A DNA stretch of 63,050 bases, the filler included, from Hyphochytrium catenoides (taxonomy: Eukaryota > Protista > Hyphochytriomycota): NCBI GenBank assembly GCA_900088475.1. It is 7 parts of 7 records of this genome, joined end to end, with 100 filler letters (N's around TTAATTAATTAA, not from the genome) between each part and the next. Parts side by side here need not be neighbours in the genome. Positions count along the whole stretch, not along the records: positions 23,375 to 40,835 come from FLMG01001856.1; 6 more parts are not named here. One strand, written 5' to 3'. Shown here piece after piece: positions 23,375-40,964 of the stretch. A program made the position numbers and the translations under genes. Within the stretch, counting starts at the first letter, position 1. Every line of letters begins with the position of its first letter. The notes beneath the pieces were generated by a model. It was not told the origin of the DNA. It worked only from the letters and a program-made list of their open reading frames with translations, and did not search any database.

Positions 23375-23389
23375 GGGAGGGAGGGAGAA

Positions 23390-23421
<32 letters not shown>

Positions 23422-25269
23422 TGACAGAGACAGAGAGTGAAAGACTTACACAGGTACAAGAAGGGAGAGAGAGAAAGGGAGAGAGAAAACGAGAGAGAGA
23501 GAAAGAGTAGGTGCATCTATTTTAGAGAGCAAAGGCAACTCTTCAAAAGAGCTCTCTCAAAGGTCACGCCTCCAGTAATATGCCCTACACGTAGCTATAT
23601 CGATTAGTACTATTGGCGTAGTAATATGTAAGGTCTTGGGCTGGGGGTTACGTTTCAGGTGCAGAGCACCAGCAGGAGGGCTCCAGCATATCCCTATTGA
23701 AAGACATATACACGGGGAGAAAGTGGGAAGGGGGGTTGAGGTGCTTCAAAGAGCTCTCAGAGTGAGGGTTTTCCATCAGTCTTCCTCTCTCTCGGTCTTT
23801 GTCCTGTTGCTTGCTTCCGCCCTTGTTTGACTTTCACCGACCTCTCCCATCGTGTGATGATGCTCTTCTTCATCTGTCTTCCCCAAAGGAAGCGCGGTCG
23901 GTCGGTCAGAAGAAGATCAGCTCGCTGTCCCATCCTTCTCTCCTTCCTTTAGAAACTATTCGTTTTTATACCAAGGGGAAACATCTCCTCTTGCCGCCAC
24001 GTCTTGGTAGTACTGTGTATCAGATGAGGCAGATAGCTAGCTGCACTCGCAGACGAGTTGGAGCTGCCAAGTGCGGTGGTAGGTCCAAGTATTGGATCTG
24101 AAAGGATGCTGCTAGAGTAGAGCAGTGATGAAGACAATGGTTGAAAGAATCTGATTGTGGTAGATTGCTAAAGGATTGCAAACTGGATGATCCCTATAGT
24201 GTGCCTTCTCTGCTTGCGGCAGCTCTGAAGAGTAAGATAGCAGCAAGAAACTAACGGAAGAACAGAAAAAGGCGTGGGAGAATACTTCGGCCACATTGAT
24301 GGATGATGTGACAACTGACCTTGTTGTAGTCCACAAGTACCATGACAATATAGTTGCCGGTGAAGGTCATTCATCGGTAAATCATGTCGATCAACATCAT
24401 CAGAGCTCCTTAAGTGGCCGCAGCATAAATAGCCAACGACGGGCTAGAATTGAGACATGCTCGTGAAGGGAATGCTGCACAAAGGCGAACCTAGGATGGT
24501 CGTTTAAAGTCTTGATGCATAGAGACGTGGGACTTGGACTGCAATGATGCTGAATGAAACGAGAATTGACGCGCCGTTTTCATTCCGCTGCCTACATCAA
24601 AGACATTGCCTTGGCTCTGAACCCTTAGACTTTGCAACTCTTGTTCTTTAGCGTCGCAATAGACTATTATGAAGGGTACAGGAAGCCCTGTCGTCACAAG
24701 GCGTAGACCCCAACCAGTAGAATGGGCCTCTGAGCAATTGTTGCCCGCCACAAAAGAAGCAATAGCTGCACAAAAGTAAAACGCGACCATCAAATATGTT
24801 AGCCTGGGTTTTATAGCTAGATGTTGATGACCTCCACATTGCTGTCATAATCCCTCCTGCTGTTGTCTTGCAGAAAAATCTAGAGCTTTCACTCCCTCGT
24901 CTCAAGTCCCACGTGGTTTCAAAAAGCTTATGACGATTAGCCAAAAGGGTTATCCTTCTTTGACTACTAGAAGATTACGGAAGACTAGGATATTCCAAGA
25001 CGCGAGGTCACAGCAGAAAATGTGTCAAGTAGAGAGGAGAGGAGGCGAGGTTTCAAGAGGGCCGCTTTACCGAGGAAGTCAAAAGCACTCCTGCCATCCA
25101 GAGGCAGGACGGTACCTACCTACAAGTGGTCCTTTAACCTCTCTCGGTTAAGGACCTGCAGTCTTAGACCTATGAATATGAAGAGCAATACTGCAATATG
25201 TTCACGTCAAAGTGGTCAAAACCTATTGTCGTATATCTACTCGACAGTTGGAACAAGTCATACTAGGTC

Positions 25270-26080
25270 GTAACGTATACGCTGATGGGTCTTCTGGAAG
25301 CCTGCGGATCTCTCCTCCTCTCCCTCTTCTTCTCTTTTCAATACACACGTGCGGCAAGACCTTTGAGACAGCGGTAGATAGGCGGTGGGTCGTCTTTCAT
25401 AATATCTTCTTTGTACACTAAATATCAATGATGTGTCTGTCACGGGCTCGCTGCGAACTAGAACCCTTCCTTATGCAGCAGTCCACGCAGGCTATCAAGG
25501 TCGCTTGTCTGAGAAAGCGAAGCTGAAAAAGTATGAGCTTCCTTGTAAGGCTGGAGGGCTACAATTTGTCCCACTACTTGGGAGTCGTTTGGCGGAGTTA
25601 CGCAGGGCGTCATTGATCGTGTAGGACATCTGGTGAAGCTTCAGTGTGACCGCTCTGCTCTTGTTGATGCGTCTCGGCACCTGGCCAATGGTCCCCTTTG
25701 GCCATGGCTTTACTCCTTTCACACGAAATGTCTATGGCGCTTCATGAAGAAAGTGCGCTTCAGATTTTGAAACGTATTCCTCTTGAGCAGCTGAACCCTT
25801 CGCTTGCTTGCCTCGCGGTGGTTGAACTCGATGCTGACGACATTGTGGTTGATGGTTCACCTCCTCCTCCTACTTCTCCCCTTTTCATTACTGAGGAGAT
25901 CAACTATGATTCTTCCTTTACTGATGATGAGAGTGGAAAAGATCGAGCTGGGAACGAGACCAAGGCGTTATAGCTTTCCTCGTCTCTTCTTCTCTTCCTC
26001 TTCCTGTTCTTCCTCTTCTTGTCCTTCTTCTTCTCCTCCTCCTTCTTCTTCCTCTTTTTCTTCTATCAATATAAAAAAAA
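25270..26080 (+). mobile_element. 5'-truncated CRE-like non-LTR retrotransposon remnant (restriction-like endonuclease end plus A tail)
   Basis: DVSVT...AGYQGRLSEKAKLKKY..C...GLQFVPL matches the RLE D...E..K..KY pattern; followed by a CTT-rich 3' region and ATAAAAAAAA at 26071-26080. Confidence 0.65.
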
Positions 26081-28113
26081 TATTATCAACGACAAAGGTT
26101 TTTTTGACTTCGGTCACTTTATAGCTCTTCTACTACTCTCATCTTAGGAGTGGTCGACAGTCCAACAGCGGCAGCATAGAGTTGTCGCCTCTTAATCTTT
26201 GAAGATGGTAAGTAAATTGTAAAGTGCCGCATGCTTCAAAGCCCAGGTAGCTCCCTCATGATCGTTGTGCAGCTCTTGGACAGTGTAGTGGGCGATTGCA
26301 GGTAGATTATACAGAGCGACAACAGTTCTTGCCTTCTGAAACAGTAGAAGTAGCTAGCAAAAAAAATGATGCCTGATGAAGTACTGTTGCTACGGAAGAG
26401 CTCTTGGTGTTGCAGTACTTGTACGACTGTGCGCAATTGCACTGTAACCTACTCATTCCTGATGCTCAAAGGCTGGTAGTTCTATTCGTAGTCGTCTCGT
26501 AGAATGATTACTTCGGGGTCCTCACGAAGAGTAGTGTGCTTTCGCGTAGAGACTAGGATCTGCTGCCTTACTCAGTATAGTGATAGGAAGAAGAGGACGA
26601 GTAGGTAGGCCTCCGAAAGTACCAGCACAAGAATAGCAGCAGTTAGTTAAATAGTACGTAGTAGTGAGACACGGGGAAGAGTACTTATTCTAGAATGACC
26701 AGTAGTGTCCTTTATCACTTCTCAGACGTAGTAGTTAGCGAAGCAATAGCACAAAAGCAGACATTTCTTGGGTCACCAAACGTCAAGCGTTGAGCCTACC
26801 AAACTACTGTCATTTTCGGAGACTACTAGTAGAGCTACTCTTCTCATCATGCACTATTACTTATTATCATAGCCTTTGATAGCTGTAGGGGTGGTGGGGC
26901 CTCCAGATTGAGCCACCGCTCCCTTGGGCATGGGAAGGAGTACGCCGCTCTACTTACCGGTTTTATTACAAGATAGTTCTATGACACACTAATAAGGGAC
27001 GTAGTAGAACTATCAGGAAGAACCTGATTTCTTTCTGTCTGGAAGGAAGTCACGTGAAGGCGCAGCGTCGGCTACCAACAGATAGAAGGTAGTTTTATCA
27101 AGAGATATTTAGGAACACCATCGATTGGGAGAAGGTTGAGAACCCCAATCCTATTGGGAGAAGCTAGGAGGAGGTAGTGGAGTGTTTAGAAGAGTACTCA
27201 GTAGTAGTATTCGTAAGCGGTACGGCCAAACCCTCAAAAGGAAGTAGAATATACATGTAGAGCTACCTCTTTCCGAAGGAAGGCAGTAATAACACAACGT
27301 TAGTCGATACTACTCACTACTCAGTCTATTGCCATCAAGTAGTACAGTTCCGTTTCGTAAAGTATCTCATAGCAAGTGTCGCAGCAAAACTAACCCTTAA
27401 CGTCATTAGACTGTGTTTGACCCCACTTAGCGGACCATCATGAGAGATCAAAAGGTAGAGCAGAAGAATTCGGTAAATCTGTCCTATGTTCCTATGCCAC
27501 CTCGTGTCGCTGCTGTTGATGGACAGCTCGTCGTCCAACAACCAAGAATCGTAAAAGCATCCTTTGTACTTTATATGGGTGAACATGCCGCTGCCATTCT
27601 CGACAGGAGAGAACAAGATGATAGTCTTTGACTGCTGGACGACCTGTCAAATGCCATCAAGAGAAGAGGTTAGGAGAAGGATAGTTAGTTGTCTGCCAAT
27701 CATAGCTTGATAAGCTCTCTGCTGTCGGTGGCCTTGTGTCTTTCGTAGTCGGGAAAAGTTGACTGCTAGAGACCTATCAGATCAATGTACCTTATTTCTC
27801 CGACAGGAAAGGGTCAATAGGGGCCGTCGCTCTGTATGACCAGTCCTAAATGTATTAGAGCTTTTCCTCAACCTGGTCAAAAGAAGCGGAGCACATATCG
27901 GTCAAGATGTGTTGCTTAGATGTGGTGTCCCCAGAAGAAGTCCGCCTCCTCCCATCCAGTTCACAAGAAGAAAACACAAATTGACCGGACGGATTATCGG
28001 AAGTCCCGCTGAGACCGTCGTCGGGATGTGTGCATAGACCACTAACATATTATTGTAGTTCTACTACTGCGCACATCAACCAGAAGGAGTGTAACAGTAC
28101 GAGCACTACAGAG

Positions 28114-29420
28114 ATGCTCTCTTCACCACGCCGATTGTTACCCGCCTGCAGTAACTGTCAGAGATTGTTCAGGGCAGCGAACTCTTGTAAAGCTTCCTCT
28201 TCTTCTCTTCTTCTTCCAGGTGCCTCTCTCTACAGCCACATAATACCCGTCTCTTCGACGAACTGGGTAATCGTCTGGCCAACCTCAAAGAATCTTATCC
28301 TTCGTCACTACCATCAGCAACAAAGGGCATGGAAGGCTGTCGATGAGGGATTTCTCCTAGATGCTATCGCAGCAGCGCAGTCAGACTATACTGTCCAAAA
28401 GATGACTCCGTCATCTTTTTCTCAAGCCAGCGTTCCTTGCAACAGTGTAAGAAGTCACAAGGAGTCAGCAATAGTCGACAACAGCAAAGTAGTGATTGGG
28501 CAACAAGTACCACCAATCCTTGAAAAGTCCATTACAAGGCGTCGCCATCAACCAGGCACCCTCCAGCTTTCTCTCTATGGTCAGCATCCTCCATTATCGC
28601 AAAGGATAAACCGTCGACGCAGGCTCGTCTGGGGATACCAAGCGCCGAGGAGGCTAGCAATGAGTAATATATCCCCTTGTGGTACTCGATATAGTGAGGG
28701 AGAAGACAGAGGTACAGGAGGAGGAATTGCTGATATCTTGCGCAACTTTCCTGTCGGTGTGCACACACCTCTGCCCATCCAGGAAGAGAAAATGAAGCCT
28801 GATGAAGAGGCAGATGCACTATGTGCAGCGGGATCTAGCCTCATGCAACGGGAGGTCGACCATGACAGGATGCGGTGGATCCACCGCTTCGCATTACCTG
28901 GTGTCATTTCAGAGCTCTATGAAGATATGGTTGCCCACCTGTTGACCTGCTCTCAACCCGTGCGTCTTAAGAGCCGAAAGGGCAGAAGCCTCGGATACAG
29001 CCCTCTACAAATAAGGCTTGATGGCGTGAACCGACTTGGTATGATGAGCACTCCCCATCGCCATGCTCCTAAAATGTACCCTAAAATCATTCCTGGGATA
29101 TTATACTATCCTAGGGACAAATACTTCCCGCTTGTGGACTTCTATTTCATGGATCACCAAGGAGATGTAATGGGGATACAGGTCACATTAGAAAAAAACG
29201 CCAAAGGAAAGTGATCAAGAAGTCGACAATCTTGCGCTTTCAAACGAGATCTAACCTAGTGGACCTCAATAAGTTCCGCCTGATACTCGTTCCTTTGCCG
29301 AAATACGCGGATAAAGCGGAACTCTCTTTTGAAGAAGGCGTCGAAGTACCCTATGAAGTCTGGAAGTTGTCATCGCAGGTCGATCAGTTTCTAGAAGTAG
29401 CCAAAAGAACCCTACTGTAG
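28114..29420 (+). CDS. Crinkler/RHS-type REase-fold nuclease (member A), split by a -1 frameshift at 29192-29199
   Basis: ELYEDMV...LYYPRDKYFPLVDFYF...GIQVT in frame 0. The -1 frame continues RQRKVIKKS...RLILVP...YEVWKL, collinear with paralog E. First ATG at 28114. Confidence 0.8.
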
Positions 29421-29913
29421 CTTCTGTCATCTTCTTAGGATAGGCGTCGCCGCAGAAGCGCCGCCAAGGTTGCAATGATAAAGCGTACGATTGTCGTCCA
29501 CTCCTGGCAATGGCTAAACAACGCCGATCTGCACCGAATAGAGCTTGGTAATTCTGATGATGATGTACGCTACACACCCAAGACAAACCCCCATCATTGG
29601 TAACTGCGCACCCCGGCCAGCTGCATTATCTAGCTGATAATAGGGGCGTTCTCCTGATCAACCATTACCCAAGAGGAATATGCCGGCTTAAGCGACCTAG
29701 CTTCAGCTTAGGTCGAGTAGTAGTAGTCTATAACACTGCACTACCGTTTTCTTATCCTCAACTAAGTGAAACCACGACGTAAAGGACTTCTACGACACTG
29801 GATGGACGTTGCTCTTCTTAGATAGCGCTTGCGGTTAGACATAGCGAGCGCTTCTTGGACTCTCTTGACCGCAAACTCTTGCACCTATCAGATGATGGTT
29901 ACTACATTATCGT

Positions 29914-31833
29914 TTATTTTGCAATGGCGTCATATCTGTCTGGGATTTTCCAGATCTCAAGGCTTGGATTCGGGCCTTCGAGATGTTCTTCCAGAACGAA
30001 CTCCACATTATTGACACAAGTCCTTGGACTGGGACAAAGCACAAGCCTCAGTCTGGTAAAGTCCTTGAGCTTTAGAGAAGCCGACAGTCGCTTCACATTC
30101 TCAGTGGTCAGCACATGCCGCCCCGCATCCCTGGTAATCCACACGCCAACAACTTTGGTATCATGTCCTAGCTCGGAGCTACGTTTGAACAGTAAATGCG
30201 GCTTGTAGGATGTCATGTCGTCAAAGCGTTGATAGAGGACGCCTGGCTCCATATCTTCATGATTACAGATGTCGTTGACGCTTACAACTTCATCGCTCTT
30301 TCCCAGCTGAAGCCTGAAGGGCAGCCATTCGGAGTTCCTGCAGTCGCTATTACGATGGGTCCAAGCAACCCCTCCTGAAGATACCAGCAGGTCTGCTACG
30401 ACGCTTTGAAATATAAGTGGAGCTAAGGACGCCAGATATCCCTCTCCATCATCATTCCGCATTAGTGCCTGCCGTCTTGCAGTCAGGTGGGTAACCTCGA
30501 GCATGTTTCTCCCATAGATAAACTCTTCAGCAACGCATCTACTGGCAAAGTCCACCTCAGAATATCCTTGGAACCCAGGCTGCACTTTATATCTGACTAG
30601 GAGGTTGCTTATCTCAGGGTTCTCAATCCCGCATTCCACTAGGAAAGCGTCTTGATCAGTTCTCCAGATAGCCTCTACCAACTCGTCTTGAGCATACGAG
30701 AAATCCAGTGTCCTGCTTGGAAGTACAGGACAGAATCTGCCCCCAAACAGCTCATAGCTGTGGTTGATGCTATCCTTTGTATAATAATGCCTTAGACCTC
30801 GAGTCACATAGCCTTTGCTAAGCATGTAAGCTCCAACAGCTTGAAGGTCCTTCAAGTCCCATTCTGGCAAGTAGAATGTCACAGGTCTTGCTTGCTGCTC
30901 CCTGTATTTCGACGGAGAATTGGTGGCTAGCGTCCTCAAAATAGGTAAATAGGAGAGGTGCAGCTGTGAAGTAGTGGAAGTCATCCCTTTTACCAATTCT
31001 TCTTCTTTTGACAGTGTCTTAGGGTCCACTTCTAATCCTTGTGGCTCGACGTGCTGCAAACCAGCCAAGGCTGAATCTTTCTGTCGCATCACAGTCAGGG
31101 AAGGAGAAGGCGACCGAAGACCACTGCCGGGCAGGGACCCAAAGATGTCGGGCCGAAGAATTCTGGCCAGGTAATAATACTGGAAGAAGCACTTACCAGT
31201 GCCAGGACGACCAACCAATAACGCGGAGCTGGATCCATTTCTCACAATCTGCGACAACAGTGCTGGATAGACGCTTCTAATGAAAAGAACGTTGTGTGCT
31301 ACGCCCCAACACGGCAGTGATCCAGGCTGCGCATCGACGATTAATGCATCCACCGTGTCCGAGACTTTTTCTAGGCGACATGTCTTGCTGGAAATGGCAG
31401 TCACAAGACTAGTAATAGAAGATTCATCAGATCCAGGGAGAATGCGATCTATACAAGTACGTTCGTCATGATGGTTGTCTTCTTGTGGTGATGACGAGAA
31501 AGAGACCGAATTAGCCATAGTTGGAAGGGCTGTCGGCCGGGGTATTTTCAGCAGGCCTTTACCATTTGTCAAAAGGGTTCCACAGCGGAAACCCCAAAGA
31601 GGGCTCAACTCATGTCTCCGTGAATTTCTCTGGGTAACTCTCCGTTGCGTGCAAGAAGACTTCTTTTTTGCTTCATGCGTTGTAAAATTCCATAGCAGCG
31701 GCCAAGATGGGGTCTTTGTCTTTAAGAGAACTTTCCAGCTCTGTTTGCTGCAAGCTAAACCTACTCGAGCTAATTCCAGTAGGTGGCGCGGCGTTGAAGG
31801 GCCCGTCAGCGGAAAGCGTCTTGCCGAATACAT
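29914..31833 (-). CDS. Crinkler/RHS-type P-loop NTPase plus degenerate REase (member B)
   Basis: LFIRSVY, LLVGRPGTGKCFFQYY, FYLPEWDLKDL, FGGRFCPVL; C-terminal RLRLVLCPSP...EIWKIP. Intronless; first ATG at 31833. Confidence 0.85.
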   Translation of the reverse strand: MYSARRFPLTGPSTPRHLLELARVGLACSKQSWKVLLKTKTPSWPLLWNFTTHEAKKKSSCTQRRVTQRNSRRHELSPLWGFRCGTLLTNGKGLLKIPRPTALPTMANSVSFSSSPQEDNHHDERTCIDRILPGSDESSITSLVTAISSKTCRLEKVSDTVDALIVDAQPGSLPCWGVAHNVLFIRSVYPALLSQIVRNGSSSALLVGRPGTGKCFFQYYYLARILRPDIFGSLPGSGLRSPSPSLTVMRQKDSALAGLQHVEPQGLEVDPKTLSKEEELVKGMTSTTSQLHLSYLPILRTLATNSPSKYREQQARPVTFYLPEWDLKDLQAVGAYMLSKGYVTRGLRHYYTKDSINHSYELFGGRFCPVLPSRTLDFSYAQDELVEAIWRTDQDAFLVECGIENPEISNLLVRYKVQPGFQGYSEVDFASRCVAEEFIYGRNMLEVTHLTARRQALMRNDDGEGYLASLAPLIFQSVVADLLVSSGGVAWTHRNSDCRNSEWLPFRLQLGKSDEVVSVNDICNHEDMEPGVLYQRFDDMTSYKPHLLFKRSSELGHDTKVVGVWITRDAGRHVLTTENVKRLSASLKLKDFTRLRLVLCPSPRTCVNNVEFVLEEHLEGPNPSLEIWKIPDRYDAIAK

Positions 31834-34067
31834 GGCTGCCAAGCATTGGAAGAGGTAGGAGCTACCCCCTGTATCTGATCATATCTGTCTGCGCCACTTT
31901 TTCGCTTCCTAGCATTGCCAAGCCACTGCCTGTGTCAAGAGGCTTTATTTCAATCAGAGAAGACCTTAACAACTTGAAGCCTGCTGCTAGCCAGTAGTCC
32001 CGTTTGCAGTGCAAATACGAACCCTAAGGACGGCCGTTCTTTGTTTCCGGAGCCCTTTTGCTAGTCCTTTACCAAGCCCAAAGAGCTCCGCATTGCAAAG
32101 TCCAGTTATTTACTAGTCTTCTCACCGTAAAGTAGTAGCCTAGAAGTGAGGTCTTTTACAGGCTGCAATTTGCCTCAAAACTTACGCGCAGCCTTTAGAG
32201 CTCAAGACTTTGGAATGGTTGCGCCACGGGAACAAGAGAAGAACAGGTGAAAAAGAGGCGGGAAAGCAGTTCCTATCCTCATAACTCTAGTTATTAGCTA
32301 CATTATACTCCTTCTTCCCACTACAGATGCTCTTAAGCTACAGGCCAGTATGAGGCCTCCTTGTTACAAGGCAAAGAATTGAAGTCACAATCCCTATTGT
32401 CGTGAACTTAAGGTTGGCCCCTGGATGGTGCTGCTAACATCCTTGTTCAACAGTAGAAAGTGAATCAGGCAAGATACCAGCGATAATACGGAGCCAACTA
32501 CTTCAACTTCAATGCAGAGGAACGCTAATATGCCCTGTCTTGTTTAGACCATATTCGGTCGATACATAGAGTGGATACATGCAGTCCTCAGAAGAGGACA
32601 CTTCCAGCTAGATTGAAGACATTAATAACAGCAGAGACTGAAGACTTTGACAACAGCAGAAGGGGAGTGCGGTAGGCAGAGGAAGGAGACTAGCGAAGGC
32701 GACCTCTTGAAGTCTTTAAACAAAAATCTGGAACTTCGAGGATCAGTAAAGTATTTGATCATCAGCATCTCATGCAGAGTAGTGGCGTAAGGGCTTGTAC
32801 AAGGACTTGACCGTCCTTCTTTATGGATAAATCAAAGGTCGGTCTATCCCTTCCGGTTACATTGAGCTCTATAGGATAGAAGGAGCTTGGCACTTGCACC
32901 TCGCCAAAGCACAAGGGAGGTGGTCCCCAAGAGCAGGAGCGTCGCCCGATCGTGTTGCCTTATTATTAGGGCCACAACCCGTCAAACAATCTGTACGAGT
33001 AACGATAAGCAGCATGGGTTGATTCGAGCAACAGCAGCGCCAAGCGGGTCACACAATTGAATCAATGCCCACCCTATTATTCCTCTGCTTAGGCCAACGG
33101 ATCACCAGGGTTTTCAGCCCTATCAGCAACCTTTCGCACCCAGAGTTGGAGTTTATGGATAACTTTCAATCGTCCTTGAAAAAAATGTACTCTTCTACTT
33201 GAGACAACAGCCGTCACGGTGAGCAATCACCAATCACACTCTTTTTATTCAAGGTAGCAGGTTGTAGCTTTACAGCTATCCTTCGACGACAGCCATTAGT
33301 TCTATATCCCCATCTCCGCTCCCATTCTACATTCTTCTTCGGCAGTGTACTTCTCGAGGACCATAGTAGTTCTACGCCAAGAAGTAGCGGCTATGGGGCT
33401 ATGGAGACCTTGAGTAGACCACTGCCCCACAGTCTCATTGTTACAACGGCCCCTGTATGGCAAGCAGTTACCCAGCACTCGTCTGGTCATTATCCCGAAG
33501 AACAATGAACAATTCCACACCAGGCCCTCTTGCACTGTAAGTTACAGTTCGCTTAGTAGTAGTAGGTTCTATCTGTATCTTGCCCATCAACTTTCTGCCA
33601 GTATCAGCTGTTTATGTTATGATGGGAACTATTATTCCGAACTAACTACTTTTATTGACCAGATATAAGAATTGAAGAGGAAAGGAGGAAGTACTACAAA
33701 TCTCTACGCTTCCCTACTAGTAATAAACCTACCAACTATTACTACACTTTTTTAAAGCCTACTGTAGTAACTTGTACTAGGTTGATAGTAGAAGACGAGA
33801 GTCTCTTCTGTATAACTGATCTGCAGCCGCCTTGAGATAGTGCTGAGGACATAAGGGAAGGGGCCATGTTTCGTTCTATAGCTTCATTCTCTAGGGGTTG
33901 GAGACAACAACGATCCTTCCACCGCGGGCACGGTGGCAAAATGTAATTTCCTCTCTTTCGCGCAACATCTTCGCTGTTCACTCTACGTCTGTTACCAATT
34001 GATGAGCCCCCAATAGCCTTGGCCGCATCTGAGATATCATCCACATCAGCTAGGTTGTGCTTACACA

Positions 34068-35855
34068 ATGCTGAGATCTCCTCTCAGCGCTCACAACGCT
34101 GCAATTGCGAGACTTATCATGCCTGGAAGAAGAACCCAACCAATCCGATGCAGCAGGACCCAACACTTCGGGCAAGCCATTACTCCAGTTGCAGTCTCTT
34201 ACGCGACGGGTAAGAGAATGAGGGAATTCTCAACCGCCCACATACAGAAGTATGGAGCTCCTCCGCTTAGCTCACGTGATAAGGTCACTCCTAAGCAAAA
34301 AGAGGAGCAAGAGACCCTCTCATACCTTTATCGTGCCATGACAAGCAAAAATTGTCGAGTAGAAAAGGTCTCGGATACTGTTGATGCTTTCATCATAGAT
34401 TCGGAGCCTGGACTTCTGGGGGAGTGGGATCTGGGCTACAATATACTCTTCATCAGAAGCTTTTACCCAGTGCTATTATCTAAGATAAGAGCCCACACAC
34501 CGTCAACGGTTTTACTGATTGGGAGTCCCGGAATTGGCAAGACCTTCTTTCAGTACTACTACGTTGCCAGGATCCTTCGCCCTGACATCTTTGGGTCCTT
34601 ACCTGTGGATGCCAATGGTACTTCGTTGATCTCTAAGGTACTTTTGAAACAGAAAGGATCCTCCGAAGTCGAGGCCCTGAGCCTGCAAAGCCTACAAGCA
34701 GAGAAGGTCGCCGCTGAGAAAAGCCCAGGCTTGACTGGATCTTCGAAGGACAGTGAAACCGTAACATTTATAGAAGTCGATCGTACTGAGGTACATGCGG
34801 CTACCTCCCTGGTGCTACAGTCCATGAGTTCGAGCTTAGCAACGGTCCCGACAGGCACCAACTACAGCGAGCTTCTGGCTTCAAGCAGTGGCGAAGTTGT
34901 TGAGTTTTACCTGCCGGAGTGGGAGCTGAAGGAATTACAGGCTGTGGGAACCTATCTTCTGGACAACAATTACGTCCCTGCTAAACTAAGGCGCTACTAT
35001 ACCCTTGACTGCATTGAACTGATGCATCAATTGTACGGCGGAAAGTTCCGTCATGTCCTGTCAGCAGAAGCCTTGACTTCACCCGAGGGCGACCATAATT
35101 TGTCCCATGCTTTGCTAACGACAGATGGAAACACTTTGTTAGAAGACTGCCGTCTTGACAACCCTAACATCAGCAATCTTTTGTTGCGCTATGACGTCAA
35201 TCCGGATTTTAGGAGCTACAACGGTGTTGATCTGCTGAACGAATTCGTGGTTTACCAGTACATTTATAAGAGAGATATTCTAGGCATGGTTGATCTGTCT
35301 GTCCAACGAGGAGCTCTAATACGAAACGACAAGGGTGGCGGTTACCTAGAATCGATAGCCCCTTTGCTTTTCCACAATGTGGTTGCTGAGCTATTGACTA
35401 GCCCACGTGGGGTTACTTGGGCCCAACGTGCGAGCAGTTGTGAACCATGGGAATGGTTGAAATTCACCCTTCGACTGCGGGAGAATCACACAGGTGATTG
35501 CCTGTTGGACGTTACGGATTATCGGACTATGGAATGCGGGGTACTTTATGAGAGCTTTGATACAGCCTTTCCTAGGCTAAACTTCTTATTCAGAATTAAG
35601 GAAGACGGTGTCAGAGAGACTGTCACTGGCATCTTTATCACTCGGAAGAAGGGAACCCATCTGCTCACCGCAGAGAATATAGTGGACATAATGAAGGCAC
35701 TGAGAATTGAAGACCCAACGATGTTACGTCTTGTTATCTGTCCAAGTCCGACCCTCTGCGAAGAAACAGACCTAGTTCTAGAAGAAGATCTAAAGGATCC
35801 AGCACCTGGCCTTCATGTGTGGAGACTTCCTAACACTTATGATCCTTGTCTCTAG
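34068..35855 (+). CDS. Crinkler/RHS-type P-loop NTPase plus degenerate REase (member C), paralog of B
   Basis: LFIRSFY, LLIGSPGIGKTFFQYY, TFIEVD (putative Walker B), FYLPEWELKEL, YGGKFRHVL; shares ARILRPDIFGSLP with B. Confidence 0.88.
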   Translation: MLRSPLSAHNAAIARLIMPGRRTQPIRCSRTQHFGQAITPVAVSYATGKRMREFSTAHIQKYGAPPLSSRDKVTPKQKEEQETLSYLYRAMTSKNCRVEKVSDTVDAFIIDSEPGLLGEWDLGYNILFIRSFYPVLLSKIRAHTPSTVLLIGSPGIGKTFFQYYYVARILRPDIFGSLPVDANGTSLISKVLLKQKGSSEVEALSLQSLQAEKVAAEKSPGLTGSSKDSETVTFIEVDRTEVHAATSLVLQSMSSSLATVPTGTNYSELLASSSGEVVEFYLPEWELKELQAVGTYLLDNNYVPAKLRRYYTLDCIELMHQLYGGKFRHVLSAEALTSPEGDHNLSHALLTTDGNTLLEDCRLDNPNISNLLLRYDVNPDFRSYNGVDLLNEFVVYQYIYKRDILGMVDLSVQRGALIRNDKGGGYLESIAPLLFHNVVAELLTSPRGVTWAQRASSCEPWEWLKFTLRLRENHTGDCLLDVTDYRTMECGVLYESFDTAFPRLNFLFRIKEDGVRETVTGIFITRKKGTHLLTAENIVDIMKALRIEDPTMLRLVICPSPTLCEETDLVLEEDLKDPAPGLHVWRLPNTYDPCL

Positions 35856-36481
35856 CACTTGTGTCCATACATCTCCTGCTAGGCTCGATGCGAAAGAGGC
35901 GTCAAAGAAGGATAATGATGCAAATGATCCTTCGCCCACACATCAAGAACAAGAAGCAGCGCCAGGCACCGATAGGTTTATGACCTGCAAGGAATCGCCC
36001 GCGAAAATAATGTCCTTATTCGGGCGCAGGTTAGCTAAGCCAGAGGCCTCTATGGAAATATTAATACTGGGCACCCCCACAACTTATATCGCGCTCAATC
36101 AAAGCTCTTCTACCAATGCGTCGTGTTCCCTAGCTCAACTTAAGATATTGATAATTTTTCCTAGTCCCTCCCCTATTTCTTTTGTCGTTCTCTCCTATTA
36201 GTAGTCACCGCGATAGACTCTAAGCAACTGTATGTCTTCTGTTGCTCAGAATCCCATAACTCTACCTTCCCCTACTTGTCTCCAGACAGCGAGACCCAAG
36301 TGCCATGGGTCACCTTCTTCAGAGAGGTGCTCACATGATGCAACTACACGAACCTCTTCTTCGCTAGCAAACAGCTTAGGTGGCTACGTCATCTCTTTCT
36401 ATAGAGACAGAGAATAGATCTTTAGTATTACGGCAGGATATGATTTGATTGTTTCAAGAACAATATTTCTCGCTACGATGT

Positions 36482-37519
36482 TTATGATCCATCCGTCGTA
36501 GCCAAAGATCGTGCGGCGGCTAGAACGGTTTCCACTCTCAGCTCGGGCGGCATCTTCCATACCTCAAACTCTACTTCTCTCACGGTGCGGACAGTCCCTT
36601 GTGGCTCATCATCTAATTGACTTGGAAAATCGTCAGGGTGCACCCTCGGCCGTAGGGGAAGTAGTATTACCTTCAGTTTATTGGGATCGTGAAGGTCTAG
36701 AGCTTCAGCAATATCTGAAGCCGATAAGACGTTGGCTTCCTCAAGCTGGCTAGTTAAAGCAACCTTTATAGCTTTGACTACTCCATCCTCCTCCATAAAA
36801 ATGATATTTTTTATGGGAGCAGGAGTACTTGGCGTACCGAGTGAGTATAGCCTCTGTGGGCGCATGCGCCAATACCTCAAGCTTTCTGCATTTGCCACCC
36901 TTTCCACCAGCCCATCAAACGTGGGAAGCTTCAATGGACTGTATGAGGAGCCTCCTGACGCGGGCCGGGATTGCCATCCTTGACGATCATTTAAGAGTGC
37001 TTGAATCACTAGCTCACCACCGAGGAGGGCCTCGTCTGTCAGATAATAGCGCTTCGCCTTACTACCTTCCAATGCTGGGTTCCGGTCTTTTTCCACGGTG
37101 CCCACAATGGTTACCCCATACTGAGCTGGTGCATGGACTAAGGGCTCACGGCGGTTTCTTGGCTCATGATGTTTAAGTCGCATTATAGTTGATTCTTCCT
37201 TATTGCAATGTTGAGGATTATTAGTGGCCTTGTTTGCCAAAGGTGATGATGGAGAGATGACGGGCATAATGGTAGAGAGAAAGCGTCTTCCGGAACACGG
37301 CGCCAGTTTGAGGCAGCCATTGTCAGCAAACTTTACAGCTTGGCATCTAGCGGGAAAGCAATAGCAAAGAGGGGAGTTTCGGAGCTGCGAAGCTCTTCTG
37401 AGCAGTAAAGATGCAGCCGCTGGTGCAACTTGAAGACTAGGAGAGCCTCGATTTACTGCCGCTTGAATGCTGGGCTCGGTGTATAAGATTACGCGAAGGG
37501 ACGACATGGATGTAGTCAT
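36482..37519 (-). CDS. Divergent REase-only member of the same family (member D), catalytic motif eroded
   Basis: ELVIQAL...GW...YSPLKL...LY...IIFMEEDG..KAIKV...KLKVILLP...FEVWKMP aligns with member E. Confidence 0.72.
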   Translation of the reverse strand: MTTSMSSLRVILYTEPSIQAAVNRGSPSLQVAPAAASLLLRRASQLRNSPLCYCFPARCQAVKFADNGCLKLAPCSGRRFLSTIMPVISPSSPLANKATNNPQHCNKEESTIMRLKHHEPRNRREPLVHAPAQYGVTIVGTVEKDRNPALEGSKAKRYYLTDEALLGGELVIQALLNDRQGWQSRPASGGSSYSPLKLPTFDGLVERVANAESLRYWRMRPQRLYSLGTPSTPAPIKNIIFMEEDGVVKAIKVALTSQLEEANVLSASDIAEALDLHDPNKLKVILLPLRPRVHPDDFPSQLDDEPQGTVRTVREVEFEVWKMPPELRVETVLAAARSLATTDGS

Positions 37520-38931
37520 GTGTGATTAGTTGTGAAGCCTCGTTCGTTATTGAACTCTTTTGAAAATGGCAAGAGTTGCGTTGCTGAGAAAAAGTGTGGT
37601 TACTGCTCTTCTGCGCCTAGTACAGCCTGTTGTAGAACTACTGTTGAGTCGGTCTTCGACGATACTTGGTAGTTCCAGGCACCTAGAGCGTCTCTCAGCT
37701 CTCTCGTTTTGGACTCAGCGAGCAACGTCACCAGTCAGGAGGAAGACCACTACATATGGTGCCTGGCAAAATTTAGCAGTAAAGCAGTCCCTGTAGCTTA
37801 GGTGTAGAACTAATTCCACTACTACTAGCCACTATGTTTCGGTAAAGTTGCTGGTAGTGCTACTAGCTACTACTGCTACCAAGACAAGATATGCGGTCTA
37901 CCACTGTCTTTTCTTGGACCGCTTTGCTATGAGCGTACTCTAGAAGTGTTGTAAGCACGGCTAGCTCTTTCCTATTTTTTTTATAGTAATAAAACAAAAG
38001 AAATTTGAAAGAGGATCAACGATTCCATGCTTGAAAGATCTAGACTCCAGGTCTATTTGAGTTTGACACACGAGAGCCGTTGGCCTTGACAAGTAATACA
38101 CCTGGTATGTACTATAAAGGGACCCCAAGAATAGAGCTATTACAGAACTACGTGTGGCTCAATTCTGTGAGTGGGATGGGGTCAGAGCACGTCACTCTTT
38201 TTTCAATTCCATCTTATGTGCAAGCTAGCTGGCTACTCATGTCTACCTACAGATGCTCTTCAGTGATTCAGCGGAAAAAGTGGGCGCCGGACATTGATGA
38301 CTTCTGACCGGTGATGAACCAAATTGTGGATCTATCGTCCGTCAATCAATCTGCAGTCTCAAGCCATCACTGGAAAGTCGAAGGGGCTAATGGTCAGTCC
38401 TGGTAGAACTACATGTAACCGTTTTAGAAGTGAAATAGGGGATGGGGTGTGGTGGCAGCACTTTATTGTGTGGTCCATTTATTTACTTGTAACCATCTGT
38501 CCAAACCCTACCCATAAAGAGAGCTCACTGCTTTGTTAGAGATTCCAACTAAGGTCAGTGATAAAAGGCACTATCATCAGAAAAAGGGTACCTGGACGAC
38601 AAAGAGGTTCTGTGAATTGAGCTTGATGGCTCTTGACGTTAGTGGAACTAGTCAACAAATAACCATGAGGAAGAATGAAATGGCCTATTCTGCACACTAC
38701 TCTTTGGTATCATCGGGTATTGCACAATAGTGCACTCAAAAATCGCCGATAGTTTATCATTACCGAGGCTGTCGACAAATAGGCGCCACCTTGACCTGTT
38801 GGAAGTGACATACAAATCATTTCTTAAGCTCCACCCTAACGCGCATTCAATCATCATTGACTAGACCCAATTGGAACAACTAACTTAAGGGCGTTCCCAA
38901 GCCTGCGTCCGATCACCAGAACTTTCAAAAT

Positions 38932-40266
38932 ATGAGAACAGTGAAGTACAGATTGAGTATGAATCTGTTCTTTGCTGCCAACGCTACTATGAAGGGCCAA
39001 CGGACATTGTGGTTGAAAGGAGGAATAAGCCCACCGGTTCGGGCTCGAAGATCTATGTCTACTGTAACATCGCGCAGTCTGCATGGCTGCAAAGTCGATC
39101 CGCTGCTGAATCGCTCTTCTCTGGGGTTCATGGACAAAATTGATTGCAAGCTTTTCCCTGGTCACAGACAGATTAGGTCCCTCTCTAGTATGGACCCAGA
39201 CGGCAGCGGCACGAAGAATACCGCCGTGTGCGACCCTACCCCAAGGGCTGCCCTTGTTAGCAAACTCGTCGTACTGGCATCACCGGCACTCATCCCTCAG
39301 CATAGTGCGGACGAACCACACAGTCCTCCTGCTGTTGCGCAGCAGGCCTTTGGCACCTTACTTTCTGGAAGTAGTAGGACAATTGTAGAGCGTACTGGTG
39401 CTGTTGATTCAGCGCTCCCGTTCACGAAGGTCAAGGAGGGTCTTGCGCTTCGCCAAAAGAAGGGACAAATCCGGAGCTTTTCCATCTCGGACGGTGGCCT
39501 AAGTGTCTCTTCTCCTTGGGACCAAGTAAAATTATGCTGTAACGTAAGAAACCACAAGAGGAGGGTTGTCTTGCAGAAAGTAGTAGGCTCGAATAGTGTG
39601 GTGGAAGGGGCCAGTGCGCAGCGGAAGATAAGGGAGGACCGGAGTATCACAGAAACGATAGAGAAGACGAAGAGCACCGGCATGTTAAGGAAAGGGCCCA
39701 AAAGCCATGGAACGCATTGCGTCGGAAAATTGTATGAAGAACTGGTGATTGCCAGGCTCGAAACGGAGAGGCTTCATGGATGGCTTTGTCGACGAGGAGG
39801 AAAAGGCTCGAATTATGTGCCGCTACGGCTCTCCAAGTTCATAGAGGTGAAGAGGGTGGCCACGAGAGGTTTGGACTACAACACCATGGCGCCTTGGACT
39901 CTCTATTATCCGAAAGCGAGCAACTTTCCGTTGGCAGATATTCTCTTCAAGGACCACAGCGGTGTGCTCTACGGCCTACAGGTTACTACCATGGAAAGAC
40001 GGCAAAACAAGCAGATAACAGACTCAAATCTTCAGATTTTCGCTAAAGCGGTAAATTTGCTGCCTGAGGACCGCCGTATGTTCCGTATGATTCTTATTCC
40101 AACACCGGGCCGGGCCGACCGCTCAGAGCTAAAGTTCTGCCCTAAGATTGATGCTGCATCTTTGCCTGAGTATGAAGTGTGGAAAATGCCAGTTGACGTG
40201 GAGGTTGAGATCAGCATACAAGCTTACAGAAGTTATGCAAAAAACCACTTACAGAAGTGGCACTAA
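38932..40266 (+). CDS. Crinkler/RHS-type REase-fold nuclease (member E), catalytic motif intact
   Basis: GKLYEELV...LYYPKASNFPLADILF...GLQVTT...RMILIP...YEVWKMP. Confidence 0.85.
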   Translation: MRTVKYRLSMNLFFAANATMKGQRTLWLKGGISPPVRARRSMSTVTSRSLHGCKVDPLLNRSSLGFMDKIDCKLFPGHRQIRSLSSMDPDGSGTKNTAVCDPTPRAALVSKLVVLASPALIPQHSADEPHSPPAVAQQAFGTLLSGSSRTIVERTGAVDSALPFTKVKEGLALRQKKGQIRSFSISDGGLSVSSPWDQVKLCCNVRNHKRRVVLQKVVGSNSVVEGASAQRKIREDRSITETIEKTKSTGMLRKGPKSHGTHCVGKLYEELVIARLETERLHGWLCRRGGKGSNYVPLRLSKFIEVKRVATRGLDYNTMAPWTLYYPKASNFPLADILFKDHSGVLYGLQVTTMERRQNKQITDSNLQIFAKAVNLLPEDRRMFRMILIPTPGRADRSELKFCPKIDAASLPEYEVWKMPVDVEVEISIQAYRSYAKNHLQKWH

Positions 40267-40964
40267 CTATTCACGAATGACTCTTGTTTACCATCCCAAG
40301 AGCCCAAGAGTGGTGGGTCAGCTCTCATTGTCATTAAGGAGAGGAGACGAGGGAGGAGGTAGTGCCGACAGGGCATTGTCGAGCACTGTTCCTGGAGGAC
40401 AGCTGAGTAGGTTTCCTTGACGTCACCATTCGCTGTCCTAGCTTTCTATGTCCGACAACAAGGAAGGGCACTAATAATAATACGGAGTGCCGGTCAGTAG
40501 TCAGTAGAACTGGAAGGTTCTCTTCTTCCGAACTACTTTGCCACCACTCTGCCACCACCACCACTCCTCTGCCGCCTTTCTCACCAATAGTTCTACTCTT
40601 CTTTGTCCTTCTCGTGTTTCTCCAGTGTCCTCCATTATAAAAATAGATAGAACTAGTGCTACAGTGGTAAAGGGGACTCTCCTGGAACAACTGTTTCGTT
40701 CTACTTGCCAGTTCTACAAGTACAGAACTGGTTGTTCAAGAGTACCGTTTATTAGAAGCCAATCTGAGAAGCAGTACAAGTAAGTGGTACAGGCTGATCT
40801 GGTCAATAATGACCTATTTTCTCCGAAAGACCGGCNNNNNNNNNNNNNNNNNNNNNNNNNNNNNNNNNNNNNNNNNNNNTTAATTAATTAANNNNNNNNN
40901 NNNNNNNNNNNNNNNNNNNNNNNNNNNNNNNNNNNTCCTCTTCGTTTAATCTTCGCACTTGCAG

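What the first reader, a model, noticed from the sequence alone, without database searches (positions are those of the whole stretch)
28114..40266. Five-gene Crinkler/RHS-type nuclease/NTPase cluster with mitochondrial-presequence-like N-termini instead of an effector header
Seen: five intronless paralogs within one contig share a C-terminal domain ending RL(I/V)LxPxP...EVWK(M/L/I)P, and two also carry a P-loop NTPase. None has a hydrophobic signal peptide or the LFLAK/HVLV header. All start with unrelated Arg/Ser/Ala-rich, acid-poor leaders, several with R-3-like cleavage motifs (C: KRMREF|ST; D: GRRFL|ST; E: RRSM|ST, IRSL|SS; A: MLSSPRRLL...LRHY|H). Established: NTPase plus PD-(D/E)xK REase is the core of Crinkler and trypanosome RHS proteins, usually described as delivered effectors or nuclear proteins. 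Inference: this is a lineage-specific family redirected to the cell's own mitochondrion. Possible roles are mtDNA elimination or uniparental inheritance, defence against organellar mobile DNA, organellar RNA processing analogous to REase-fold RAP proteins, or a selfish toxin-antidote locus.
Basis: partly seen in the sequence, partly recalled or inferred. Interest (0 to 1): 0.85.

Follow-up and report, generated by a model that had tools for sequence, protein, structure and literature searches.

The report
Diverged RHS-type NTPase gene cluster
Five neighbouring genes in an unidentified eukaryote are fast-diverging copies of a little-known protist family related to trypanosome RHS and Crinkler proteins; many family members start with a mitochondrial-import-like leader, so the family may act inside the organelle, but this is predicted, not shown.

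Summary
The five paralogues are real. A profile of the long form (B, C) matches the C-terminal domain of E (4e-27), A (1.5e-16) and D (3.6e-8). B and C also carry a P-loop NTPase. Gene A is broken by one frame change.

An exhaustive search found about 230 cluster representatives, almost all from unnamed eukaryotic metagenome or transcriptome contigs. Of 37 members, 11 hit Pfam RHSP (PF07999). The model of C matches AAA+/STAND folds. No Crinkler header or signal peptide is present.

The restriction-endonuclease (REase) call for the C-terminal domain could not be confirmed. No PDB, Pfam or PADLOC sequence hit was found. Only the order of helices and strands and a conserved E/D/K/Q set fit.

Only E keeps that set (4/4). 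A keeps 3/4 and B, C and D keep none. B and C have also lost many conserved NTPase residues.

The mitochondrial idea is partly supported. The leaders have the same composition as translated intergenic DNA. However, A, C and E lack acidic residues for 52–76 residues (combined p=5e-4). Presequence-like N-termini also recur in homologues (47% against 7–20% in controls).

Verdict: a new variant of a known kind, moderate interest, localisation and activity untested.

The parts
28114..29420 (+). Gene A: short form (long unrelated N-terminal region plus the shared C-terminal domain). Broken by one frame change, with no internal stops in either piece. Given here as one part, first ATG to the last stop.
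   Evidence: (profile E=1.5e-16 on the in-frame part). It keeps 3 of the 4 conserved polar positions. The first acidic residue is at position 77.
29914..31833 (-). Gene B: long form, from the first ATG (the open frame reaches 31842). It has a leader of about 105-130 aa, an RHS-type P-loop NTPase, a helical region and the C-terminal domain.
   Evidence: E=1.6e-129. Walker A is GRPGTGKC, the Walker-B Glu column is Thr and the conserved Arg column is Cys. It keeps 63% of 56 conserved NTPase-half columns, against a homologue median of 89%.
31189..31212 (-). Walker A (P-loop) of B. It is atypical, with Cys in place of the Ser/Thr.
   Evidence: It lies inside the 92-nt B/C inverted repeat, which is 77% complementary.
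29917..30441 (-). C-terminal domain of B. It keeps 0 of the 4 conserved polar positions (Q, L, R, W).
34068..35855 (+). Gene C: long form, 595 aa.
   Evidence: E=6e-139. AlphaFold model: pLDDT 79.7, pTM 0.78.
34068..34286 (+). Leader of C (aa 1-73). It is predicted disordered apart from a short helix at aa 8-17. There are no acidic residues before aa 53, and 6 Arg in the first 30 aa.
34287..35342 (+). C: small N-terminal alpha/beta subdomain, P-loop NTPase (Walker A at 34521-34544) and a helical, possibly winged-helix-like, region (aa 74-425).
35343..35852 (+). C-terminal alpha/beta domain of C (aa 426-595). It keeps 0 of the 4 conserved polar positions (H, N, R, F).
36482..37519 (-). Gene D: short form, 345 aa. 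The N-terminal ~136-170 aa have no detectable homology. The C-terminal domain lies at about 36485-37111 and its conserved polar positions are lost (N, M, K; the first position is ambiguous).
   Evidence: (E=3.6e-8).
38932..40266 (+). Gene E: short form, 444 aa. The N-terminal ~237-258 aa have no detectable homology. The C-terminal domain lies at about 39643-40263. It is the only copy with all four conserved polar positions (E, D, K, Q) and keeps 11 of 12 conserved columns.
   Evidence: (E=4.4e-27).
31843..34067 (.). Divergent intergenic region between B and C. It has no family fragment, no header-like ORF and no Rfam hit.
37520..38931 (.). Divergent intergenic region between D and E. It has no family fragment and no header-like ORF.

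Best explanation
This is a tandem cluster, shaped by gene gain and loss, of a eukaryotic (mostly protist) gene family. The full-length family form has these parts in order: a short N-terminal presequence-like leader, a small alpha/beta subdomain, a P-loop NTPase of the RHS/Crinkler (CR) type with an AAA+/STAND-like fold, a helical region, and a ~170-aa C-terminal alpha/beta domain. That last domain carries a conserved Glu / Asp(Glu) / Lys / Gln set and ends in the EVWK-x-P-x-x-Y tail.

Inferred mechanism. The NTPase and helical module binds nucleic acid and switches or oligomerises with nucleotide. The C-terminal domain is the effector part and is most likely a divergent restriction-endonuclease-like nuclease. 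Because many family members from unrelated eukaryotes start with a basic, acid-free leader that often ends in an R-x-(hydrophobic)-(S/T/A) motif, the family most likely works inside an organelle, probably the mitochondrion, on organellar nucleic acids.

In this window the family has been duplicated and is diverging fast. There are two long copies (B, C) whose conserved NTPase and C-terminal polar residues are largely replaced. They are probably catalytically impaired and may serve as scaffolds or regulators. There are three short copies in which the NTPase is replaced by 140-260 aa of unrelated, compositionally random sequence. Of these, E alone keeps the conserved polar set, D has lost it, and A is disrupted.

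Shown: paralogy, the family, the NTPase type and fold, residue losses, leader statistics, and tandem arrays elsewhere. Inferred: nuclease activity, organellar location, and any division of labour between copies.
For: Paralogy.

Family size and eukaryotic context: 230 representatives at E<=1e-3. Named members come from Arcella intermedia and Batrachochytrium salamandrivorans. Neighbouring genes include TCP1 chaperonin, eIF3a and ammonium transporters.

NTPase type: PF07999 in 11/37 members and nSTAND3 in 8/37. Foldseek matches ORC/Cdc6, RFC, Apaf-1 and NLR at E 5e-5 to 1e-3, probability 0.84-1.0. The model has pLDDT 79.7.

C-terminal domain: conserved E (83%), D/E (98%), K (80%) and Q (82%) in 100 homologues. 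These map to a helix, the start of a strand, the same strand and the next strand, in the element order helix, three strands, helix, strand.

Leaders. Among 66 N-complete homologues, 26% have no D/E and at least 4 R/K in the first 25 aa. The figure is 1.6% for internal windows and 7.4% for a random-translation model. With D/E<=1, the figures are 47% against 7% and 20%. The R-x-[FYLIM]-[STA] motif in residues 9-70 occurs in 45% against 9% and 25%. Binomial p values are 5e-6, 8e-7 and 3e-4. Three Arcella-type transcript-derived complete ORFs (P0012, P0017, P0189) all have such N-termini. For the window, A, C and E have acid-free stretches of 52-76 residues, combined p 5e-4.

Divergence: B and C keep 63-64% of conserved NTPase-half columns against a median of 89%.

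Other evidence: tandem arrays of two to three copies occur in another eukaryote's contigs. ORFs of 345-642 aa have stayed open despite 42% and 30% identity between copies.
Against: No targeting predictor could be run, and no transcript or protein evidence exists for the start codons.

The window leaders are much longer (75-264 aa before the first conserved domain) than typical presequences. Their overall composition equals translated intergenic DNA. D's N-terminus is not presequence-like and B's is only weakly so.

Homologue N-termini come from automatic gene calls that may extend into 5' UTRs. About half of the N-complete homologues do not meet the simple criteria, and a few have hydrophobic N-termini instead.

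The C-terminal domain gave no hit to any PDB sequence, Pfam or PADLOC family. The conserved set is not a canonical PD-(D/E)xK motif: Gln-x-Thr stands where (D/E)-x-K is expected, and the Lys sits on the preceding strand. The fold could not be searched on its own.

Known relatives (CRN, RHS) are reported as nuclear (PMC5289972).
Confidence: 0.55

Rival explanations
1. These are intracellular nuclear or cytosolic CR-type conflict or immunity proteins with no organellar role. On this view the N-terminal regions are fast-evolving, unconstrained disordered extensions. Their basic, acid-poor look is simply what near-random sequence of this base composition encodes.
For: Leader composition is indistinguishable from six-frame intergenic translation. 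The leaders of B and C share no similarity although the domains are 42% identical. Leader lengths of 75-264 aa are atypical for presequences. A contains an RRRR cluster that could be a nuclear signal. CRN proteins are reported as nuclear (PMC5289972). Tandem expansion and rapid divergence are typical of conflict genes.
Against: The acid-free N-terminal stretches in A, C and E exceed the random-translation expectation (p 5e-4). Presequence-like N-termini, with R-x-hydrophobic-S/T/A motifs just ahead of the conserved core, recur in homologues from independent eukaryotes well above both control rates.
Confidence: 0.28
2. This is a decaying array. The cluster consists of pseudogenes or pseudogenes-in-the-making left over from a past expansion and has no present function.
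For: A is frame-shifted. B, C and D have lost the family's conserved polar residues. The N-terminal regions have random-like composition. No exact product is on record in public gene calls.
Against: Four ORFs of 345-642 aa remain open although the copies have diverged to 30-42% identity. The chance of a stop-free run of about 260 codons at this composition is below 1e-6 (own calculation from base frequencies). Hydrophobic core columns are kept, and C folds with high confidence. In-frame codon likelihood is best in frame 0 for all leaders, though this test is biased by the absence of stops. E keeps 11 of 12 conserved columns.
Confidence: 0.1
3. These are delivered (secreted or translocated) Crinkler-like effectors whose header or signal peptide lies on an unrecognised upstream exon.
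For: The NTPase, helical and C-terminal module resembles the commonest CRN C-terminus as summarised in PMC5289972. A weak homologue exists in Batrachochytrium salamandrivorans.
Against: There is no LFLAK or HVLV motif and no hydrophobic N-terminus. No header-like ORF lies in the upstream intergenic regions. There is no Crinkler-header Pfam hit in the window proteins or in the 47 homologues scanned. Homologues sit singly among housekeeping genes of free-living-type eukaryotic contigs.
Confidence: 0.04

Closest known systems
Trypanosome retrotransposon hot spot (RHS) proteins (Pfam PF07999 RHSP P-loop domain; NCBIfam TIGR01631)
   Same: The P-loop NTPase is of the same type. 11 of 37 family members hit PF07999 collinearly (best 2.6e-6), and three more carry it as a precomputed domain. 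Both are multicopy and tandemly expanded.
   Different: The window proteins B and C do not reach any threshold. There is no association with retroelement insertions in this window. The N-termini are different, and RHS proteins are described as nuclear. The C-terminal domain here has no detectable counterpart in the RHS models.
Crinkler (CRN/CR) effectors with the NTPase + HTH + REase C-terminal module (Zhang et al. 2016, as summarised in PMC5289972)
   Same: The order of modules is the same: a P-loop NTPase, a helical region, then a C-terminal alpha/beta domain with conserved acidic residues. Both occur in free-living eukaryotes, as multigene families with rapid diversification.
   Different: There is no Ubl/LxLFLAK header and no HVLVxxP junction. 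A basic, acid-free leader stands in their place. The REase nature of the C-terminal domain is unverified here. Three of the five copies lack the NTPase altogether.
STAND / AAA+ ATPases (ORC1/Cdc6, RFC, Apaf-1, NLRs)
   Same: There are fold-level matches to the NTPase and helical part, Walker A is present, and weak nSTAND3 and AAA_16 hits occur.
   Different: TM-scores are low (0.15-0.38). There are no repeat sensor domains. The C-terminal effector domain is unrelated to theirs.
Nuclear-encoded organellar REase-fold proteins (for example RAP-domain proteins), from my own knowledge
   Same: The concept is the same: a degenerate PD-(D/E)xK-like domain sent into an organelle by an N-terminal transit sequence, often with the catalytic residues lost.
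   Different: No sequence relationship was found. The domain architecture is different. This is only an analogy.

Membership tests
Crinkler (CRN) effectors | N-terminal header (Ubl fold) with an LxLFLAK motif | tested here: not met
   No LFLAK-like motif in any of the five proteins. No Crinkler-header Pfam hit in the window proteins or homologues.
Crinkler (CRN) effectors | HVLVxxP recombination motif at the junction of header and C-terminus | tested here: not met
   No HV[LV]V motif.
Crinkler (CRN) effectors | CR-type C-terminal module (NTPase + HTH + REase) | tested here: inconclusive
   The NTPase is of RHS type at remote-homology level. A helical region at aa 339-423 follows it in the model. 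The REase is unverified.
Trypanosome RHS (PF07999 / TIGR01631) | Score above the curated threshold of the family model | tested here: not met
   B and C give no PF07999 hit at E<=1. TIGR01631 scores 9.9 bits against a cut-off of 89.75. Homologues score up to E=2.6e-6, and three have a precomputed PF07999 domain. The relation is therefore at superfamily level only.
P-loop NTPase (AAA+/STAND-like) | Walker A GxxxxGK[ST] | tested here: met
   C has GSPGIGKT. B has the variant GRPGTGKC. A, D and E have none.
P-loop NTPase (AAA+/STAND-like) | Walker B acidic residue and the family's conserved Arg/Lys positions | tested here: inconclusive
   C keeps the Glu column. B has Thr there. Both lack several conserved basic columns: R265, K271 and R319 in both, plus R328 in B.
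P-loop NTPase (AAA+/STAND-like) | Fold | tested here: met
   Foldseek matches to ORC1/Cdc6, RFC, ClpB/Hsp104, Apaf-1 and NLRs at E 5e-5 to 2e-3 with probability up to 1.0. TM-scores are low.
PD-(D/E)xK restriction-endonuclease fold | Core alpha-beta-beta-beta-alpha-beta fold | not testable with these tools
   The order of secondary-structure elements in the model is compatible. Whole-model searches are dominated by the NTPase.
PD-(D/E)xK restriction-endonuclease fold | Catalytic motif: Glu in helix 1, Asp at the start of strand 2, (D/E)xK in strand 3 | tested here: inconclusive
   The family conserves E (83%), D/E (98%) and Q-x-T (82% and 67%), with the Lys (80%) on the preceding strand. This is a non-canonical arrangement. 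In the window only E has all four positions. B, C and D have none.
PD-(D/E)xK restriction-endonuclease fold | Sequence-profile match to a known member | tested here: not met
   No hit in PDB sequences at E<=10. No REase family in Pfam or PADLOC.
Mitochondrial presequence | N-terminal 20-60 aa that are basic and free of acidic residues | tested here: met
   Met for A, C and E: the first D/E is at residues 77, 53 and 56, and there are 5-6 K/R in the first 30 aa. B is weak and D does not meet it.
Mitochondrial presequence | Amphipathic helix | tested here: inconclusive
   The maximum helical hydrophobic moment over 11-mers is 0.66-0.68 for A, B and C, and 0.40-0.47 for D and E, with no calibrated threshold. 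The model shows a low-confidence helix at aa 8-17 of C.
Mitochondrial presequence | R-2/R-3-type processing motif | tested here: inconclusive
   The R-x-[FYLIM]-[STA] motif occurs in C (aa 52), D (aa 79) and E (aa 40 and 82), and not in A or B. In a random-translation model it occurs in 25% of sequences.
Mitochondrial presequence | Call by a trained predictor, or experimental localisation | not testable with these tools
   TargetP, MitoFates and DeepLoc are not available here. There are no expression or proteome data.

The most novel reading that the evidence does not exclude
A widespread, so far undescribed family of protist nuclear genes sends a Crinkler/RHS-type NTPase-nuclease module into mitochondria in place of the delivery header used by pathogen effectors. 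The family forms fast-evolving tandem arrays. In this genome it has split into NTPase-bearing copies that have lost the conserved polar residues and NTPase-less copies, one of which keeps them. This would point to an organelle-directed system for nucleic-acid surveillance or genome conflict, built from interacting paralogues.
Probability: 0.3. Interest if true: 0.75.

Novelty: new variant of a known kind. Interest (0 to 1): 0.5.

Why it matters
CR (Crinkler/RHS) modules are known as pathogen effectors or nuclear trypanosome proteins. What they do in free-living eukaryotes is an open question. If a whole clade of them is imported into mitochondria, a conflict-type NTPase-nuclease system would be acting on organellar genomes. 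That bears on mtDNA inheritance, mitochondrial plasmids and mobile introns, and organellar RNA processing. The question becomes testable with existing data: targeting predictors, organelle proteomes and transcriptomes of Arcella and other protists.

The window also gives a clear example of paralogue decay and domain loss within such a family. If the localisation fails, what remains is an ordinary fast-evolving multigene family of unknown function.

Tried and rejected
- Word-indexed protein searches with C and with alignment A3 were blank. Only the exhaustive HMMER search and a search from homologue P0006 worked.
- Exact-product look-ups for C, E and D found nothing on record, so the source organism stays unidentified.
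- The first AlphaFold run, with a two-sequence alignment, was useless (pLDDT 28.9).
- Pfam and NCBIfam on the window proteins gave nothing above threshold.
- PDB sequence searches with C, A3 and the C-terminal profile A4 gave only chance-level or no hits.
- Pfam and PADLOC on C-terminal domains gave nothing.
- Rfam gave nothing.
- The family profile was tested against the N-terminal regions of A, D and E with hhalign, to see whether they are degraded NTPases. There was no similarity: E 0.1-0.56, probability below 1%.
- Viral connection: no relatives in IMG/VR, and BFVD matches are generic AAA+ only. A virus or virus-like element reading is rejected.
- There are no transposon-like repeats in the piece. 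The only long repeat is the P-loop coding segment shared by B and C.
- The bacterial promoter and terminator scan is irrelevant for a eukaryote.
- Literature: no paper on mitochondrial CR/RHS-type proteins was found. Zhang et al. 2016 is not held, so its REase subfamily definitions could not be checked. What I say about them comes from the review PMC5289972 or from memory.
- The accession GCA_015179865.1, which carries one weak homologue, traces to a sponge-holobiont metagenome and says nothing about taxonomy.

Full report
**Scope.** I worked only on the piece 23375-40835. It is eukaryote-like DNA of 43-52% G+C. It has no Rfam hits and two simple-sequence tracts. The 4.6 kb upstream of the cluster has no long ORFs and no family hits. 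I do not take it for human sequence.

**Observation.**
- A: 28030/28114-29214, plus strand.
- B: 29914-31842, minus strand, 642 aa.
- C: 34068-35855, plus strand, 595 aa.
- D: 36482-37519, minus strand, 345 aa.
- E: 38932-40266, plus strand, 444 aa.

B and C are 42% identical over 526 aa. D and E are 30% identical over 209 aa. A profile built from B, C and 35 homologues (A3) matches the C-terminal domain of E, A and D at 4.4e-27, 1.5e-16 and 3.6e-8. All five therefore share that domain beyond chance.

Only B and C have a Walker A motif.

Gene A is not intact. Its frame ends inside the shared domain and the rest of the domain continues in another frame. This is one frame change, with no internal stops in either piece, and outer bounds of 28114-29420. 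I left it as it stands and searched its pieces apart.

The genes are arranged as convergent pairs, A/B and C/D. B/C and D/E are divergent, and E is last. This fits an inverted duplication of a short-plus-long pair, but I could not test that.

**Family.** The window proteins hit nothing curated, and their exact products are on no public record.

The exhaustive HMMER search found 230 cluster representatives at E<=1e-3, of which 24 are at E<=1e-30. The best scores only 202 bits, so no close relative of this organism is in the library.

Nearly all hits are unnamed products from metagenome or transcriptome contigs. The named ones are from the amoebozoan Arcella intermedia and, weakly, the chytrid Batrachochytrium salamandrivorans.

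The contigs are eukaryotic, with neighbours such as TCP1 chaperonin, eIF3a, ammonium transporters and a copia-type RT. In one assembly (ERZ25071330) the family stands in tandem arrays of two, two and three copies. The family was not found in viral collections.

**NTPase half.** Of 37 members, 11 hit Pfam PF07999 (the RHS P-loop domain; best 2.6e-6) and 8 hit nSTAND3. Three further homologues carry PF07999 as a precomputed domain.

With the 37-sequence alignment, AlphaFold gives a confident model of C: pLDDT 79.7, pTM 0.78. Residues 1-73 are disordered. Foldseek matches ORC1/Cdc6, RFC, Clp/Hsp104, Apaf-1 and NLR ATPases at E 5e-5 to 2e-3 with low TM-scores.

The 'Crinkler/RHS-type NTPase' label is therefore supported at superfamily level. 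A helical region follows the NTPase in the model. This fits the NTPase + HTH + REase layout that the review PMC5289972 reports as the commonest CRN C-terminus.

**C-terminal domain.** I could not confirm a restriction-endonuclease fold. A profile of the domain (A4) hits no PDB sequence at E<=10 and no nuclease family in Pfam or PADLOC.

Three things do fit.
- The element order in the model is helix, three strands, helix, strand.
- A Glu on the first helix is conserved in 83% of 100 homologues.
- An Asp/Glu (98%) sits at the start of a strand and is registered opposite a Gln (82%) on the next strand.

Two things do not fit the canonical motif. The Gln is followed by Thr where Lys is expected, and the conserved Lys (80%) sits four residues after the Asp on the same strand. 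I rate 'divergent REase-like nuclease' as the likeliest reading, but unproven.

**State of the window copies.** E keeps all four conserved polar positions and 11 of 12 conserved columns. A keeps three of the four. B, C and D keep none.

In the NTPase half, B and C keep 63-64% of 56 conserved columns. The homologue median is 89% and the 5th percentile is 70%. For the polar columns they keep 43-57%, against a median of 90%. B has Cys in the Walker A Ser/Thr position, Thr in the Walker-B Glu column and Cys in a conserved Arg column. C keeps Walker A and the Glu but lacks several conserved basic residues.

The N-terminal 140-260 aa of A, D and E show no trace of the NTPase.

Even so, four frames of 345-642 codons have stayed open across divergence to 30-42% identity. 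This argues against simple decay.

**Leaders.** No signal-peptide-like hydrophobic segment and no CRN header motif is present. No header-like ORF lies upstream.

The leaders have D+E 6.1%, R+K 14.3% and S 11.4%. The six-frame translation of the piece's own intergenic DNA has 7.1%, 12.9% and 11.2%. The conserved cores have 12.4% D+E.

Two signals remain.
- A, C and E have no acidic residue in their first 76, 52 and 55 residues. Against the random-translation model, p is 0.004, 0.02 and 0.02. B and D are unremarkable. The Fisher combined p is 5e-4.
- The trait recurs in the family. Of 66 homologues with complete N-termini, 47% have at most one acidic and at least four basic residues in the first 25 aa. 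The figure is 7% for internal windows and 20% for the random model. An R-x-hydrophobic-S/T/A motif lies in residues 9-70 in 45%, against 9% and 25%. The transcript-derived complete ORFs of Arcella type (P0012, P0017, P0189) all show it.

Caveats:
- Automatic gene calls may over-extend N-termini.
- About half of the homologues do not meet the criteria, and a few have hydrophobic N-termini.
- The window leaders are much longer than typical presequences.
- No trained predictor was available.
- A plastid transit peptide, or no targeting at all, cannot be excluded.

**Explanation and rivals.** Best reading (0.55): a fast-diverging tandem cluster of a protist-wide RHS/CR-type NTPase family whose members are probably organelle-targeted. 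E is the only copy resembling the conserved C-terminal form. B and C are probably catalytically impaired, D is degenerate and A is broken.

Rivals:
- The same family, but nuclear or cytosolic, with random-like disordered N-termini (0.28).
- A decaying pseudogene array (0.10).
- Delivered effectors with a missing header exon (0.04).

**Novelty.** I found no paper describing CR/RHS-type proteins with mitochondrial leaders. Zhang et al. 2016 itself is not held, so I cannot exclude that it mentions such forms. I file this as a new variant of a known kind.

- One search printed tblastn segment bounds for gene A before I knew it was broken. Those bounds bracket its frame change. Gene A is listed as one part.

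Noticed in passing
window 31130-31221 and 34512-34603: A 92-nt inverted repeat, 77% complementary, is the only long DNA-level repeat in the piece. It is the P-loop coding segment of B and C. It is far better conserved than the rest of the two genes (42% at protein level), which suggests strong constraint or local gene conversion.
   Followed up: partly
window 23377-23507 and 25976-26064: A (GA)n-rich microsatellite lies at the edge of the piece, and a (TCT)n / 15-nt tract lies further in. The 4.6 kb between 23520 and 28000 has no ORF over 106 aa, no family fragment and no Pfam hit.
   Followed up: partly
L006 5277-16448; L004 9899-15196; L003 6223-11563: In contigs of one ENA assembly (ERZ25071330) the same family forms tandem arrays. 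There are three 578-aa copies at about 4.7-kb spacing, and two arrays of two copies. In L003 the array lies next to a 1672-aa RVT_2 (copia-type) ORF.
   Followed up: partly
homologues P0181, P0190, P0193, P0195, P0029 (N-termini): A minority of homologues begin with a strongly hydrophobic segment instead of a basic leader. In some it is followed by an RR-F-F-S-like motif. This could be a signal anchor or a bipartite targeting signal in organisms with complex plastids, or a mis-called start.
   Followed up: no
window 28114-40266 (gene order): The genes form convergent short/long pairs (A/B and D/C). This is consistent with an inverted duplication of a two-gene unit, with E as an extra short copy. 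No short (NTPase-less) forms were seen next to long forms in the other loci examined.
   Followed up: partly
window 32610-32660: A 25-nt unit is repeated twice in tandem (84% match) in the B-C intergenic region. Its significance is unknown.
   Followed up: no
window 35815-36201 (+): An ATG-started 128-aa ORF overlaps the 3' end of gene C and runs into the C-D intergenic region. It has no Pfam hit and is probably spurious.
   Followed up: partly
L004 18831-21785: Three tandem 344-aa ORFs with no Pfam hit lie downstream of the family pair in that contig. They are not detected by the family profile.
   Followed up: no
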